From positions 20,398,001-20,462,000 of the forward strand of contig NC_047017.1 in the NCBI RefSeq assembly GCF_902652985.1: DNA of 64,000 nucleotides. The letters are read 5' to 3'. This document shows positions 1,392-41,958 of this stretch, one piece after another. The position numbers were made by a program, and so were the translations under genes. Position 1 is the first letter of the stretch. Every line of letters begins with the position of its first letter. The notes below the pieces were generated by a model that was given only the letters and a program-made list of their open reading frames with translations, made no database searches and was not told where the DNA came from. The stretch is from Pecten maximus. Its lineage: Eukaryota.

Positions 1392-4300
1392 ATCATTTCG
1401 TAAGATCGTGTGACGAAAATGGCGGAAACGACAAGTGTGTTCCATGTGCTGCTGGCACATTTCTGCTGGACAAAACGTCGTCGATGCAGCACAATTACGA
1501 GTGTGTGACAGTCCCTCCGTGTTATCCAGGTATAAACATGTATATCAGATAATTAGATGCAGTATGAAATGTTATACCAACTAAATCGCCTATGAGCTAT
1601 ATTTTACTACCTGTATTTTGTTATTTTATTAACACGTAAGACTTTTTCCTCATTCAACATCTTCAGGTGTTTACCTTATAATAGAACTATCAAAAGAAGC
1701 AGGGATATTATGGTAAAAAAAGAAGATAAAACTTTTAGCACTTTCCATTACAAATTGAGAGTGAACATTTTCAGCTAATCAGAAACCGTAGAACCTAAGA
1801 TTAGCACGTGCTAATTGTAATTTATTACACAGATGTTACCCAAACGGCTCCTTTTTATATGTTTTCAGCAAACCCATGCTGTATCCTTTATATCAGTTTC
1901 AATCGAAATCGAACAATATCTAAATTTTGACCAATCAAAAGCCTCTGTGTGGTTCCTATGGCAACGAAACCCATAAATTGAATTCGCAGTCCCCAAATAC
2001 CCTTATATACAAAGGTGCTGTTGCAGAACCGCCCACAGCGATTTCTTGAAATCGACTATATTTTCCAGTAAAGCTATGAAAAATACATATGGAACCCGAA
2101 TCACTGGATAAGGGCAGTAATTCAAAGTTGAAAAATGTATGTGGAAAAAATGCACGGGCGATACAAGTGGTCCTTGTCGTACACAATAATACAACGTATT
2201 GATTTATTATGAAAATGATTTGATACAATGTCCATGGCAATGTATTATGTTCTACTATGTTTAACATACTTATAGTAGTTCCGTATTACGTATGATTCAT
2301 CATTTTTCTCACTTGACCATCTTCGTCTTCAGTACTTCTTCAAAGCTTCTCCTCCGTTGGGATGTGCCACACAAAAGTTCCCTTTGCCACTTGGTCTTTT
2401 GACTACTCACCGCGAATGGTGCTCGGCGTGTTGTTATAATTGCTGTTACGTTTTACAATTCTATTTAGTTCAGTTATTCTGTAGTAAAGTTGTCTTTGTC
2501 TCAAATAGGAAAATGGAGAACTCCTGCGTTGGGTTGGGATGTAAAGTTAAGTTCAAGTACAACCAGGTTGGCGATGGTAAAAATCCGCGAAAAATTGAGG
2601 ACTGGATGAAAGATGTTCTCCTTTCTGAAGGTGTCTTACTTTCTGAATCAACAGAAGCAAAGATGTGTCCAAAATGCTTTTTCAGATACCTCAAGAAACG
2701 TCCTGCATCCGAGAATGCCAATGAACCGGAACGGAAAAAAGCTTCCGTAGACAATGATGATTCTGGTGACGAATCTGACACTCTGGACGGGTATCTTTCT
2801 GTAGATGATTTATACTATGCCCCTTCTTCGAACAGAAAATGTAGCATTTGTCGAACTTACAACATGAAGAGTTCTAGCTGCATCAGTGAGAAAGCAAGAC
2901 ACCAGCTGCTTATCAAACATAAACTGTACATGCCTGAGAATTCCAGGGTGTGTTCAAGTCATCTTCTTGGTAAGGATATCAGTCCTGACATTGAGCCGGT
3001 TTTGACAGGGAGGGATAAACTTGTTAATCACTTAGCCACCAAGTCACCAGCTGTTATCAACGATTTACTCAAAATCATACAGAACATGTCCAATAACTTG
3101 TCACCGCTTGTATTAAACTTCGACAACATGGATGATGAAGATTGCCAAGCTTGGACAGGCTGGGATTGTAATCAATTCAATCAAATACACGATGCATGTT
3201 CCGAACATATTACTGGTACAAAAGCATTATCATCTAAGAATGCCCTTCTGCTGTTTTGGGTTAAACTCAAAACAGACATGTCTTTCACTCAGTTGGCTTC
3301 TCTTTTCCGCATTCATAAATCGAGCGTCAGCAGAATTTTCCAGATCGTTACAGATGCTCTAAATCAAGCCGTAGCTCCCACACATCTTGGTCCGGATCAC
3401 GTGTCTAGGGCGCAAGCGTTGGATCACAATACAGTTTTCACAAAAACATTCTTCGGCAACAAAGTCACTGTAATATTGGATGGTACATATATGTGTAACC
3501 CATTCTTATATGTGTACATGTCTGTGATCTTGTCATCCGTGCTGTATGTTTGACATATATGTTGACATTGACCTGGACTCGGGACATCTGCAATGCGACA
3601 AGTACGACACTGACCGGAACTCGCACTGCACGCTCCAATTTTCCGCCGGACATAACACTCTAACATCCGGTCTGCTGACCGCACCATCATTATGTATTTG
3701 GCTCGCGAGGGCAACACATCGTAATATATCATAGTATAAGCCTTAGCTGCAAAGCTGTTGAAGGATCGGGGTGCCGGATAGTCTGCCGGATAGACGTTGG
3801 GGCGCCATTGTAACAGGAGACTCTTTTCAAATATCAATCGGACAACGATTCTCTGCAACATACTTTTATTCCCTTTCATTGGGTTACTTTATACAAGAAA
3901 CCTGTAATATAAAAACACATTCTTACTCACAGAACAATGAAACGGACTATACGAATATTAAATACAGGTAAACCGAAAGTAGAATTAACACACACACACA
4001 CAAACACGTTTACTCATATATGCTGTGCTTACCAGACTATCCGGCACCCCGATCCTTCAACAGCTTTGCAGCTAAGGCTAATACTATGATATATTACGAT
4101 GTGTTGCCCTCGCGAGCCAAACACATAATGATGGTGCGGTCAGCAGACCGGATGTTAGAGTGTTATGTCCGGCGGGAAATTGGAGCGTGCAGTGCGAGTT
4201 CCGGTCAGTGTCGTACTTGTCGCATTGCAGATGTCCCGAGTCCAGGTCAATGTCAACATATATGTCAAACATACAGCACGGATGACAAGATCACAGACAT

Positions 4301-7300
4301 GTACACATATAAGACTGGGTTACATATATATATCGGCAAAAGTGAAGAACATGAGTTTCAGCGGAAAAGTTACTGCGGTAAAAAAAACCGCAACTACGTG
4401 AAGTTTATGAGTATTGTGTTCCCTAACGGTTACGTTCTAGACACTGTCGGCCCATTTCTTGGTAGTGATAATGACGCCAAAATCACTGACAAGATACTTA
4501 CCTCATTACAAAGTCTGTCAGGTATCCTAGAGGAAGAGGATCAGGTAATTGTAGACAGGGGTTTCCGAGACATTTTGAGCAAACTATCAGACGAGGGATA
4601 CGAGACTCGCATGCCGACATTTCTCAAACCTGGACAGAGTCAACATGATGGTATAAAGGCAAACACAGACAGGTGTATCACTAAAACAAGATGGGTGGTC
4701 GAAAGTTATCACTCTCGTTTCAAGCAATTCAGATTTTTTTTTAAACTGAACTCACATCAAACTACTTCATCAAAAATCTCGAAAGTCTTCTGAAAAGTGT
4801 CACGGCATGTCTGAATTGGCTACGTGGACCCATATATCAGCCTTCGTCAACAAAAGCAGCCGAAGATGAAAAAGTTGCTCTGGAGATGAAGTCACTTCTA
4901 AACAAGTCCAACATCCTAGCAGAGCGTGTTGAGAAAGAGCCAGACCTATCACGGAGAGCCAAATCCCAATGGCAGAAGCTAGAGGCAGCCCAGCTCGAGT
5001 TCCCACGTCTTGACCAAGAATATCTAGAAACTCTGGCATATGGGACGTACCAGGTGAAGTTGGCCCCCGGATACATATCGGAACATTTGACAGCAGATGG
5101 AGATTATGAAGTCATGGCATACCAACACTCTTCTGACCTGATTCGATGTCAAATCCGATCTCGTCATGAATCGCAAACGAAATACAACATATGGATCCAG
5201 TACTCAGTTACCGAACAACCACCAATACAGAATTACTACTGTACGTGTCCAACCGGTCAGAGGACTCATATCGCCAGTGTTCTCTTCTACCTTGGGGTCT
5301 ATGTCCATAGTCAGTCTCGAAAACCACTTCGACCAACCACGTTTATGCCACTGATGAAGTAAATAGCCCGCTAATATATATAATCCAGAATGTAGGGAAG
5401 ATACTACATTGAATGTTTCTGATATACACAACGTAGCGTCATTGTCACTCTTCAAAAATGATCGACAGTGTCTAGAATGTAAATGTGAAGGAATATAATA
5501 CTCATATATATATGATATTAAGTTCTAAATACACAAATAATACACGATGAGCTGAATGAGCAAGAACAAAGCACATTAGTTGTACAACAAAGTCATGGAG
5601 ATAGGAAAATTGGTAAAGGGACTAACATTATCTTGAAACAAATAGCTTCCTTGAAGGCGAATTCGTCCAATCGTGTTTACTATAATATTTCAACGTATTT
5701 CTTGTCCGGACGAGATGTCTTCACTAGCATGCAGTGCTTTCAGCACTTTGATCTATATGAAGATTTATGGGGGGTTGACTAATAGAAGTTGCAAAAACGA
5801 GGCATATCCAGCAATTCTGAAGCGCAATTTTTTTTTCATGGATTACACAAATGAATGGAGATATTTTCTATCGACAAAATTCGATAGTACTCGGGGTTTG
5901 AATTAGACAAAATGCCGTTTAAACGTGCATTCAACTTTATGAGAAATATCATTTTATGTTTGATGTCAAATTTCACAGAAACTAACGAAAAGATTCATAC
6001 AATCGATATCCGATTACATTGCCCGATATATAAATGTAATTTTAGTATAATTTTCCTTACAAACAAATAACATTTTGACCTTATAAATACTTGATAAAGT
6101 GTGCTTGTGAGTATTTACGACTTTGGTACAAAATGGCCTCGTTCTGGCATGTCCGGAACGGAACAAGGTTTTCATATGTACTATCAGATGCCCCATGGAT
6201 ATGTCTATCCGGGCATTAGGTAAAGGATCGATTTCCTTCGTGGGCGGTTTTAGAGCATTCCTGCAACAGCACCTTTTCATCGAAATCAAGCAATATCTAA
6301 ATTTCGACCAATCAACGGTCAGGGAAAGGCGGTCTTTTTGCTTTTTCCAAAAATGAACGCTGCCTTTGTTTTTGTAGTGCCATGCTACAACTACATATCA
6401 AATTGTATTAACATCAGAGGATATCATAATATTGACCAATCAGAAGTGATCGGCGGTCTTGTATATTGTGTCGATTTTTGTTGGTACTGCATTAAAGAAC
6501 ATCTTTTCTCTATCTCCCACCATTTCATTTAATTATATTAATTAGTAAAACGGTTAAAGAACGAATTAGTTTTTCGAAATTTTCAGCCAATCAGAAACCG
6601 TGGCGGCCATCTTGGTTGAATGATTGGAAAATAAATTATCAGTTGTACACCCCCTGACCATCATCAACAAGTTCCATTAAGTTCCGTCCAATATTTTTCG
6701 ATATATGTCGGAAGCATTTACGGTTGTAGAAGAAAATCACATTTGGATGTTCTACATGAATCAAACTATTTTGAAAATTTATCTAATATTTTTCTGCGTC
6801 TATAATTAATTTCAGAGGCCACCCTGAGTCGATATCTGAACTATTGCGGTGAACATCGTACCTTCTGCAAGTGTGATATTACACGAAACTTCTGCGGTCA
6901 TGATCCTTGTAATTGTGAACTTAGGACATTGTTCTTCGGTCTCGGCACCCGTGTTAAATATTAACTGTGGCTGTGACAGGTATGACTCTAAAGCTTAGGT
7001 AGGTCAATATAGTTTGGCAAAGGGAGTAATTATGTCTATTCAGTTTATGCATCATCCAAAAATATATATCAAAGACATCAGTTTGATGTGGTTCTAGTCT
7101 TACCGTCCGACCATATAAGACTGTTGCGAAGCATCTATTTCTAGGGGATTGAAGTGAATATGGCAACATTTCAGAAGGAAGGTGTATGATTATCCAAGTT
7201 GTCATTTATGCAATGTTGATATAATATACTAGTATTATATATTGTATGTCTTATATAATGATAGATTATGTGGATTTTTTTATGGGGTTTTGAATGTTTT

Positions 7301-23573: not shown

Positions 23574-41958
<18,385 letters not shown>

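What the first reader, a model, noticed from the sequence alone, without database searches (positions are those of the whole stretch)
3494..4324. A MITE-like insertion that is an LTR + PBS folded back on itself, with two U3 ends
Seen: the 831-bp insert has 292-bp inverted arms. Read on the minus strand it is a complete 516-bp LTR (TGTAAC...AATAAA...GTTACA, 4324-3809), one spacer base, a tRNA-Lys-type PBS (TGGCGCCCCAACGT), a 10-nt stutter (ctatccggca/gactatccggca), then the reverse complement of the first 292 nt of the same LTR. Removing it plus 4 bp (TATG/TATA) restores the transposase frame ILDGTY(M/I)YIGKS. Established: U3-R-U5-PBS is the content of plus-strand strong-stop DNA, and TG...CA ends with 4-bp TSDs are typical of Ty3/Gypsy integrase. 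Inference: strong-stop DNA self-primed or template-switched into its own U3, and integrase inserted the product using two U3 att ends. If the junction recurs at independent loci, this is an undescribed class of integrase-mobilised, LTR-derived fold-back elements. Read-through from the LTR promoter could make hairpin RNA that silences the parent family, as Mu killer does for MuDR.
Basis: partly seen in the sequence, partly recalled or inferred. Interest (0 to 1): 0.82.

Follow-up and report, generated by a model that had tools for sequence, protein, structure and literature searches.

The report
One-off fold-back LTR insertion
An 831-bp insert that breaks a DNA-transposon gene is a single, dead-end by-product of a young Ty3/gypsy retrotransposon: one complete LTR and its primer-binding site joined to an inverted copy of the first 292 bases of the same LTR. 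It is a clean molecular fossil of a reverse-transcription accident, not a new mobile family.

Summary
Window 3494-4324 is an 831-bp insert with 292-bp inverted arms that differ at 4 positions. Read on the minus strand it is a full 516-bp LTR, one spacer base, a 14-nt tRNA-Lys-type PBS, an 8-nt stutter, then LTR bases 292 to 1 inverted.

The parent exists: a young 8.65-8.7 kb Ty3/gypsy family with 553-bp LTRs, the same PBS and 4-bp target-site duplications (TSDs). Both arms share a 40-bp deletion and two substitutions found in no other copy, so one arm was copied from the other or from a sister molecule.

The sequence breaks exactly at the end of the family's 13-nt PBS, and none of the leader follows. 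That is the content of plus-strand strong-stop DNA.

The junction and the variant PBS are each unique in the 918-Mb genome. A short-read contig from one public run spans the junction without mismatch.

Most likely this is a one-off aberrant reverse-transcription product inserted through two U3 ends. It cannot propagate, so the proposed "new class" is not supported here.

The LTR promoter lies downstream of the right arm. It can therefore transcribe only one arm and cannot make a hairpin.

The 4-bp TSD is only compatible, because the site is an (AT)n microsatellite. Two other PBS-centred inverted LTR junctions elsewhere in the genome hint at recurrence of the process, but they are unresolved.

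The parts
2357..3493 (+). Upstream part of the interrupted PIF/Harbinger-type transposase ORF (host element of the insertion)
   Evidence: ORF 2357-3553. Pfam HTH_Tnp_4 E=5.6e-10. At least 40 paralogous copies at 97-100% identity in the genome.
3490..3493 (.). Left copy of the putative 4-bp target-site duplication (TATG). The G at 3493 is absent from all paralogs examined.
   Evidence: (matches to paralogs stop at query base 399 of 400).
3494..3785 (+). Fold-back arm: LTR bases 1-292 (U3) in + orientation. Carries all 4 arm differences as derived states.
3772..3793 (+). Stutter: TGCCGGATAG, TC, TGCCGGATAG. Bases 3786-3793 are the 8-nt filler between the arm and the PBS.
   Evidence: Read directly; arm end fixed.
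3794..3807 (-). Primer-binding site TGGCGCCCCAACGT: the family's 13-nt tRNA-Lys PBS plus one extra C. The sequence breaks exactly at its leader-side end.
   Evidence: family copies read TGGCGCCCAACGT then AAATTG leader; variant unique in genome; host tRNA-Lys 3' end present 27 times, no GGGG variant.
3808..3808 (-). One-base spacer (A on the minus strand) between U5 and PBS, as in the parent elements.
3809..4324 (-). Complete 516-bp LTR, TGTAAC...GTTACA. TATAAA at window 3893-3888, AATAAA at 3870-3865. Bases 4324-4033 form the right arm.
4325..4328 (.). Right copy of the putative 4-bp target-site duplication (TATA).
4329..4793 (+). Downstream part of the interrupted transposase ORF (DDE domain), in frame with the upstream part once the insert plus 4 bp is removed.
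   Evidence: Pfam DDE_Tnp_4 E=1.2e-12. ORF 4020-4793 is in the same frame.

Best explanation
The insert is a single, non-propagating by-product of reverse transcription of a young Ty3/gypsy element. SHOWN: it consists of U3-R-U5, one spacer base and the PBS (the content of plus-strand strong-stop DNA). It is followed by an 8-nt slippage duplication and an inverted copy of U3 bases 292-1 of the same molecular lineage. Both outer ends are the U3 terminus TGTAAC. INFERRED mechanism: a plus strand primed at the PPT stalled at LTR ~292, which is a recurrent breakpoint in this family. It slipped back 12 nt and recopied 8-10 nt. It then jumped onto the 3' end of a displaced plus-strand strong-stop DNA and copied it to its 5' end. 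Alternatively, the strong-stop DNA folded back and primed on its own U3. Filling in gives a blunt 831-bp duplex with a U3 end at each terminus. The element's integrase needs only the terminal TG...CA sequence, and it inserted this duplex into the (AT)n tract of a Harbinger transposase gene with a 4-bp staggered cut. The product has no PPT, no 3' R and no coding capacity, so it cannot be copied again. Its only plausible activity is transcription of antisense-U3 RNA from its own LTR promoter, or of a hairpin by read-through from the host transposon; neither has been seen.
For: Parent family: direct LTR pairs 8.65-8.7 kb apart, LTRs with 0-1 mismatch, the PBS followed by a leader, a G-rich PPT, 4-bp TSDs TACA/TACA and CAGA/CAGA, and a pol with RT-RNaseH-integrase order. 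Sister arms: a 40-bp deletion plus substitutions at LTR 40 and 53 are shared by both arms and absent from 22 other copies. Strong-stop content: all seven exact-match family copies continue AAATTG after the PBS, while the window does not. Polymerase signature: a 10-nt stutter sits at the junction. Breakpoint hotspot: a 128-bp deletion in a propagated subfamily starts at LTR 291-294 with GGT microhomology, and an 8-bp deletion in L014 lies at 286-293. Termini and target: TG...CA at both ends, and the flanks are compatible with a 4-bp TSD on the (AT)6 allele seen in 5 of 16 paralogs. Not an assembly artefact: a 99-nt contig of run X1 (depth 31) covers 3764-3858 with 0 differences, including the extra C. 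Precedent for the chemistry: self-priming fold-back of strong-stop DNA is documented in vitro for HIV-1 minus-strand strong-stop DNA (PMC6088434). TSD-flanked abnormal LTR elements have been attributed to template switching before integration (PMC1950507). About 20 nt of a U3 or U5 end suffices for integrase (PMC7240061).
Against: The TSD is imperfect (TATG vs TATA) and lies in a microsatellite whose length varies among paralogs from 12 to 22 nt. With the commonest (AT)7 allele the duplication would be 2 bp, so integrase involvement is not proven. Canonical retroviral plus-strand strong-stop DNA copies 18 nt of the tRNA. Here only 13(+1) nt are present and the tRNA-templated GGGGC is missing. 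There is no microhomology between the PBS 3' end and LTR ~292. All 4 arm differences are derived in the fold-back arm, which is unexpected for a faithful self-copy; it could mean error-prone synthesis, a second slightly different template, or chance (one-sided p = 0.06). The contig bridging the junction has only 22 nt on the arm side, and run X1 may be the assembly's own sample. Runs X2 and X10 show no junction contig.
Confidence: 0.66

Rival explanations
1. The fold-back cDNA arose as in the best explanation, but it was captured at a chromosome break in the fragile (AT)n tract by end joining. Integrase was not involved.
For: The flanking 4-mers differ (TATG/TATA). The G at 3493 is found in none of the paralogs examined and could be an untemplated junction base. 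The (AT)n length variation means no duplication can be proven.
Against: Both termini end exactly at the TG...CA bases used by integrated family members, with no extra or missing bases. The total flank length fits a 4-bp duplication of a common allele and keeps the ORF frame.
Confidence: 0.13
2. Post-integration rearrangement. Two elements inserted head-to-head a few bp apart in the same (AT)n tract. A roughly 16-kb deletion then joined LTR position 292 of one to the PBS end of the other.
For: The TSD cannot be verified in the microsatellite. The arms differ at 4 sites, as two separate copies might. LTR ~292 is a recurrent breakpoint.
Against: This requires two independent insertions, at one site, of a variant (40-bp deletion, T40, A53) that exists nowhere else in the genome. 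It also requires a deletion breakpoint that falls by chance exactly at the last PBS base. No head-to-head pair of this family exists elsewhere.
Confidence: 0.1
3. Assembly artefact: a fold-back chimera of a long read, or a mis-join of two LTR copies.
For: Inverted repeats are a classic long-read artefact. Runs X2 and X10 show no contig over the junction, and no depth was laid on 3576-3763 in any run.
Against: A k-mer contig of run X1 (99 nt, depth 31) matches 3764-3858 perfectly. It ends where k-mers become shared with the multi-copy LTR. The ends are exact LTR termini inside an otherwise intact ORF. The arms carry private shared markers. The zero depth on the left arm is expected, because the graph collapses inverted repeats and drops rare variants.
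Confidence: 0.04
4. A member of a mobile, integrase-mobilised MITE-like family of LTR-derived fold-back elements.
For: MITE-like shape: 292-bp terminal inverted repeats and a short flanking duplication.
Against: The junction 28-mer (up to 3 mismatches) and the variant PBS are each single-copy in 918 Mb. The only inverted pair among 63 LTR matches is this locus. With no PPT and no 3' R it cannot be reverse-transcribed, and integrase cannot excise integrated DNA.
Confidence: 0.02

Closest known systems
Complex or abnormal LTR-retrotransposon insertions made by template switching before integration (Sabot & Schulman 2007, PMC1950507; rice survey, bioRxiv 10.1101/452573)
   Same: An abnormal arrangement of LTR-element parts, attributed to aberrant strand transfer during reverse transcription and inserted as one piece. 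In the rice survey most such elements are flanked by a TSD.
   Different: The abstract of Sabot & Schulman describes fusions of two parent sequences into one large daughter element. Neither text contains the words inverted, hairpin or strong-stop. Here the product is 831 bp, inverted, contains only strong-stop content, and has two U3 ends.
Self-priming (fold-back extension) of strong-stop DNA, shown in vitro for HIV-1 minus-strand strong-stop DNA (review PMC6088434)
   Same: The 3' end of a strong-stop DNA is extended on a DNA template of its own kind, giving a dead-end inverted product.
   Different: The known case concerns the minus strand, is driven by the cTAR hairpin, and was seen in vitro; it was not detected in endogenous reactions. 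The window has plus-strand content, no priming hairpin or microhomology, and the product is integrated in a germline genome.
Mu killer and other transposon inverted duplications that give hairpin RNA; LTR hairpins sought as silencing triggers for EVD (PMC11624286)
   Same: An inverted duplication of part of an active transposon family, which could yield RNA complementary to the family.
   Different: Those arise from genomic rearrangement or nested insertion, and are transcribed through both arms. Here the internal promoter lies between the arms and reads only one arm. No transcript or small RNA was observed.
MITEs and Foldback-type DNA transposons
   Same: A short non-coding insert with long terminal inverted repeats and a short flanking duplication.
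   Different: The ends are LTR U3 termini and not transposase-binding TIRs. The insert is single-copy. It descends from a retrotransposon with a 4-bp integrase-type TSD.
Solo LTR
   Same: One complete LTR of the family without coding sequence, flanked by target DNA.
   Different: A solo LTR arises by LTR-LTR recombination and retains neither the PBS nor an inverted LTR segment.

Membership tests
Ty3/gypsy (Metaviridae) LTR retrotransposon, derivative of | LTR bounded by TG...CA, with homologous full-length elements carrying two direct LTRs | tested here: met
   The LTR matches direct pairs 8.65-8.7 kb apart at 95-98% identity.
Ty3/gypsy (Metaviridae) LTR retrotransposon, derivative of | pol domain order RT, RNase H, integrase in the parent | tested here: met
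   L032 ORF 4003-8229: RVT_1 at residues 364-524, RT_RNaseH at 630-734, Integrase_H2C2 at 873-927, rve at 942-1038. The gag ORF has a PNMA-like domain.
Ty3/gypsy (Metaviridae) LTR retrotransposon, derivative of | PBS complementary to a host tRNA 3' end, placed next to U5 | tested here: met
   The family PBS of 13 nt is the complement of ACGTTGGGCG + CCA. The 22-mer ending in ACGTTGGGCG occurs 27 times exactly in the genome, in clusters. That this 22-mer is tRNA-Lys rests on my own knowledge; no locus could be passed to ARAGORN. The window copy has one extra C.
Ty3/gypsy (Metaviridae) LTR retrotransposon, derivative of | The insert itself has two direct LTRs, a PPT and gag-pol | tested here: not met
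   It has one full LTR, the PBS, and an inverted partial LTR only. It is a derivative and not an element.
Ty3/gypsy (Metaviridae) LTR retrotransposon, derivative of | 4-bp target-site duplication | tested here: inconclusive
   Parents: TACA/TACA and CAGA/CAGA. Window: TATG/TATA in an (AT)n tract. This gives 4 bp if the target was (AT)6 (5 of 16 paralogs) and 2 bp if it was (AT)7 (6 of 16, plus 1 variant).
Plus-strand strong-stop DNA content | U3-R-U5 followed by the PBS and nothing of the leader | tested here: met
   A complete LTR, the A spacer and the PBS are present. The family leader AAATTG... is absent.
Plus-strand strong-stop DNA content | The PBS part is copied from the tRNA up to the first blocking modified base (18 nt in retroviruses) | tested here: not met
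   Only 13(+1) nt are present. The tRNA-templated continuation GGGGC is absent. The 18-nt rule is from retroviruses (my own knowledge) and may not hold for a family whose PBS is 13 nt.
MITE | Many near-identical copies sharing ends with a DNA-transposon family | tested here: not met
   The junction and the PBS variant are unique in the genome. The ends are LTR U3 ends.
Hairpin-RNA silencer locus (Mu killer type) | One transcript runs through both arms | tested here: not met
   This holds for the element's own promoter: TATAAA at LTR 432 lies downstream of the right arm (LTR 1-292), so only the left arm is transcribed. Read-through from the host transposase promoter was not testable.
Hairpin-RNA silencer locus (Mu killer type) | Small RNAs from the arms and silencing of the parent family | not testable with these tools
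   No small-RNA data were available. The one run guessed to be RNA (X13) had no contig on the junction. Parent copies with 0-1 LTR mismatches suggest recent activity.

The most novel reading that the evidence does not exclude
Strong-stop DNA that fails strand transfer may be a recurrent source of integrated inverted LTR structures in this genome. In this reading, the products either fold onto U3 (this locus) or pair head-to-head through the self-complementary 3' end of the tRNA-Lys PBS. That would explain the 22-nt quasi-palindrome found at three loci, and a TRIM locus where an LTR-PBS13 is joined to an inverted LTR-PBS-leader. Such by-products would be a regular, integrase-competent way of seeding antisense or hairpin loci against the parent families.
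Probability: 0.12. Interest if true: 0.65.

Novelty: new variant of a known kind. Interest (0 to 1): 0.4.

Why it matters
Aberrant products of reverse transcription are mostly known from test-tube reactions and from direct (tandem) complex elements in plant genomes. This locus preserves, base for base, an inverted product that has strong-stop DNA content, a polymerase stutter at the switch point and two U3 termini. It suggests that such a molecule can reach the germline genome.

It is useful in three ways. It is a natural example for models of plus-strand transfer failure. It points to a pause or breakpoint site at LTR ~292 of this family. It shows how an LTR-derived inverted repeat can arise in one step, without nested insertions, which bears on how silencing triggers against LTR elements might originate. 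As a single, non-propagating copy with no expression evidence, its biological impact is probably limited to knocking out one of many Harbinger transposase copies.

Tried and rejected
- **Recurrence of the junction.** I searched the 28-mer with up to 3 mismatches and the variant PBS. Each is found only in the window.
- **Other fold-backs next to a tRNA-Lys PBS.** I examined 28 LTR-end + PBS sites and PBS sites followed by a pyrimidine. Seven are normal copies of this family. L083 has no inverted repeat. L079 and L074 are complex and old, and are not clean equivalents.
- **Autointegration.** Rejected. The inner junction joins LTR 292 to the PBS end, and neither is an LTR terminus.
- **Genomic fold-back inversion at a break.** Rejected. 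Such a duplication would include flanking DNA and would not stop at U3 base 1.
- **A tRNA variant as the source of the extra C.** No GGGG variant appears among the matches to the tRNA 3' end.
- **Microhomology between the PBS 3' end and LTR ~292.** None was found by inspection.
- **CpG or APOBEC-type pattern in the 4 arm differences.** None (G>T, C>T, G>A, T>A).
- **Population presence or absence.** Logan contigs cannot separate this locus from at least 40 empty paralogs. The skip joints at 3488-3492 to 4324 come from those paralogs.
- **Earlier findings of the scan.** Nothing was returned.
- **Literature.** Six searches found no description of an integrated LTR-PBS-inverted-U3 element.
- **Fetching C1:15060995 and C17:21163135.** Not done.


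Full report
**What is there**

Window 3494-4324 is an 831-bp insert inside an open reading frame. Its arms, 3494-3785 and 4033-4324, are 292 bp long, ungapped, and differ at 4 positions.

Read on the minus strand, the insert runs as follows:
- a 516-bp LTR, TGTAAC...GTTACA (4324-3809);
- one A (3808);
- the primer-binding site TGGCGCCCCAACGT (3807-3794);
- eight filler bases (3793-3786);
- LTR bases 292 to 1 in reverse complement.

On the plus strand, the motif TGCCGGATAG occurs at 3772-3781 and again at 3784-3793, separated by TC. As one RNA strand the insert folds into a nearly uninterrupted stem (-620 kcal/mol).

**The parent family exists and is young**

The LTR gives 63 matches in the 918-Mb assembly, including several direct pairs 4.7-8.1 kb apart. 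I inspected two elements in full, L032 and L033. Both show:
- length 8,700 and 8,649 bp;
- 553-bp LTRs with 1 and 0 mismatches between the two LTRs;
- the spacer A and the PBS TGGCGCCCAACGT, followed by a leader that begins AAATTG;
- a G-rich polypurine tract;
- perfect 4-bp target-site duplications, TACA/TACA and CAGA/CAGA.

The long ORF has the domain order reverse transcriptase, RNase H, integrase. The gag ORF carries a PNMA-like domain. That places the family in Ty3/gypsy.

The 13-nt PBS is the complement of the last 10 encoded bases plus CCA of a tRNA. That tRNA's 3' 22-mer occurs 27 times exactly in the genome, in tRNA-like clusters. Calling it tRNA-Lys rests on my own knowledge of the conserved animal tRNA-Lys(CUU) sequence; I could not pass a locus to ARAGORN.

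**The two arms are sisters**

Every other copy of the LTR has 40 extra bases between positions 30 and 31. Both window arms lack them. Both arms also share T at position 40 and A at position 53, which none of 22 other copies has.

So one arm was copied from the other, or both came from the same rare source. They are not two unrelated insertions. All four arm differences are derived states in the left (fold-back) arm, while the right arm keeps the family state. That asymmetry is suggestive only (one-sided p = 0.06). It could reflect error-prone synthesis, a second co-packaged template, or chance.

**The inner junction**

All seven exact-match family copies continue from the PBS into the same leader. 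In the window the sequence breaks exactly after the last PBS base, and no leader is present. A complete LTR, the spacer and the PBS is the content of plus-strand strong-stop DNA.

Two details depart from the textbook:
- Only 13 (+1) nt of PBS are present, and not the 18 nt that retroviruses copy from the tRNA.
- There is one extra C, which is unique in the genome and is not explained by any tRNA gene variant.

The other side of the junction, LTR 292/293, is a recurrent breakpoint. A subfamily that has since propagated (L019-L024) carries a 128-bp deletion from 291-294 to 421-423, across a GGT microhomology. Copy L014 has an 8-bp deletion at 286-293. Three independent events within about 10 bp, together with a slip-back duplication at the junction, point to a polymerase that pauses and switches template there.

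**Target and ends**

The host is a PIF/Harbinger-type transposase gene, with HTH_Tnp_4 upstream and DDE_Tnp_4 downstream. It belongs to a family with at least 40 copies at 97-100% identity.

The insertion site is an (AT)n run inside the ORF. Among 16 paralogs, n is 6 in five copies and 7 in six (a seventh 14-nt copy has one substitution); the remaining four have 8, 9 (two copies) or 11 repeats. The window flanks total 16 nt. That is a 4-bp duplication (TATA) if the target was (AT)6, which also keeps the reading frame.

The left copy reads TATG, and that G is absent from all paralogs examined. The TSD is therefore compatible with the family's 4 bp but cannot be proven.

Both outer ends are the exact U3 terminus. 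The family's two LTR ends share TGTAAC, so a two-U3 substrate offers integrase what it normally sees. About 20 terminal bases of U3 or U5 suffice for retroviral integrases (PMC7240061).

**Copy number and reality**

The 28-nt junction is unique in the genome even with 3 mismatches allowed. No other inverted pair of this LTR exists.

In Logan contigs of run X1, a 99-nt contig (depth 31) covers 3764-3858 with no difference, including the filler and the extra C. It ends where k-mers become shared with the multi-copy LTR. That argues against a long-read fold-back artefact, although X1 may be the assembly's own sample and only 22 nt lie on the arm side.

In X2 and X10, the small depth in the junction bin is fully explained by contigs of other copies that start at 3808/3809. 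The junction is therefore not seen in those runs, and contigs cannot prove absence. The many "skip" joints come from the empty paralogs.

**Mechanism**

Best explanation (0.66): a plus strand stalled at LTR ~292, slipped back 12 nt, and then jumped to the 3' end of a free plus-strand strong-stop DNA and copied it. Alternatively, that strong-stop DNA primed on its own U3. Fill-in gives a blunt duplex with two U3 ends, and integrase inserted it. Only the anatomy is shown; the order of the steps is inferred.

Rivals:
- capture of the same cDNA at a break by end joining (0.13);
- two head-to-head insertions followed by a deletion (0.10), disfavoured by the private shared markers and by the breakpoint falling exactly at the PBS end;
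- assembly artefact (0.04);
- a mobile family (0.02).

The product lacks a PPT and a 3' R, so it cannot be reverse-transcribed again, and integrase does not excise integrated DNA. Recurrence of the same junction was therefore never likely.

**The silencing idea**

TATAAA is at LTR 432 and AATAAA at LTR 455. Both arms are LTR 1-292, which is U3 upstream of the start site. The LTR promoter therefore reads U5, the PBS and the left arm only, giving an antisense-U3 RNA and not a hairpin.

Such an RNA could pair with the U3 at the 3' end of family transcripts. A true hairpin would need read-through from the Harbinger promoter. No RNA evidence for either was found: the one run guessed to be RNA had no contig on the junction.

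**Comparison with the literature**

Template switching before integration is an accepted source of TSD-flanked complex LTR elements (PMC1950507; bioRxiv 10.1101/452573). Those are fusions of parent elements, and neither text contains the words inverted, hairpin or strong-stop.

Fold-back self-priming is documented for HIV-1 minus-strand strong-stop DNA in vitro, as a dead-end product (PMC6088434).

LTR hairpins have been looked for as silencing triggers. They are attributed to nested or tandem insertions, with Mu killer as the model (PMC11624286).

Six searches found no description of an integrated LTR-PBS-inverted-U3 product. I rate this a new variant of a known kind.

**Seen in passing and bearing on recurrence**

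Among 28 LTR-end + tRNA-Lys-PBS sites, two others carry inverted structures centred on the PBS.
- L079, in a TRIM-like family about 426 bp long, has an LTR followed by exactly 13 nt of PBS and 10 filler bases. Then comes an inverted leader-PBS-LTR. Its arms are 90-95% alike.
- L074 has U5-PBS joined head-to-head to PBS-U5 through a 22-nt quasi-palindrome.

That same 22-mer occurs at three loci in the genome. The last 14 nt of an 18-nt tRNA-Lys PBS are self-complementary at 12 of 14 positions, so two strong-stop DNAs could prime on each other; this is inference. They keep open, at low probability, a broader class of strong-stop-derived inverted LTR junctions.

**Limits**

I had no raw reads, no small-RNA data and no population data. 

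Noticed in passing
L079:1275-1938 (G000:C13, about 31.788 Mb): A TRIM-like family of about 426 bp with ~160-bp LTRs and a tRNA-Lys PBS. Here a complete copy on the minus strand is followed by an extra 13-nt PBS and 10 filler bases. Then comes an inverted, truncated LTR-PBS-leader; the arms are 90-95% alike. It is flanked by about 33 copies of a 32-bp satellite that also occurs once beside the other arm. This may be a second PBS-end fold-back, but it is old and complex.
   Followed up: partly
L074:1356-1537 (G000:C10:26565118); also G000:C1:15060995 and G000:C17:21163135: A U5-PBS joined head-to-head to a PBS-U5 through the 22-nt quasi-palindrome TGGCGCCCAACGTGGGGCGCCA. The same 22-mer is present at three loci. 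The 3' 14 nt of an 18-nt tRNA-Lys PBS are self-complementary at 12 of 14 positions, which could let two strong-stop DNAs prime on each other.
   Followed up: partly
window 3478-3493 / 4325-4337 and paralogs L036-L054: The Harbinger transposase ORF contains a coding (AT)n microsatellite. Its length varies among 16 copies: 12 nt in 5 copies, 14 nt in 7 (one with a substitution), 16 nt in 1, 18 nt in 2 and 22 nt in 1. Only the 12-nt and 18-nt forms keep the reading frame, so more than half of these near-identical copies are frameshifted at this point.
   Followed up: partly
window about 36818-37852: A near-perfect palindrome of about 1 kb, with arms of roughly 485 bp (98-100% complementary) and a 63-bp loop. 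Each arm has an internal A/T run near its outer end, next to a TA-rich stretch. It has no similarity to the LTR and was not identified.
   Followed up: no
L019-L024 (G000:C17:21130587, C8:6148054, C5:40516108/40520842, C4:20689906/20697873): A propagated subfamily of the same LTR carries a 128-bp internal deletion (LTR 295-422) across a GGT microhomology. Its left breakpoint coincides with the fold-back point in the window. Some of these elements are shorter, with LTR pairs 4.7 kb apart on C5.
   Followed up: partly
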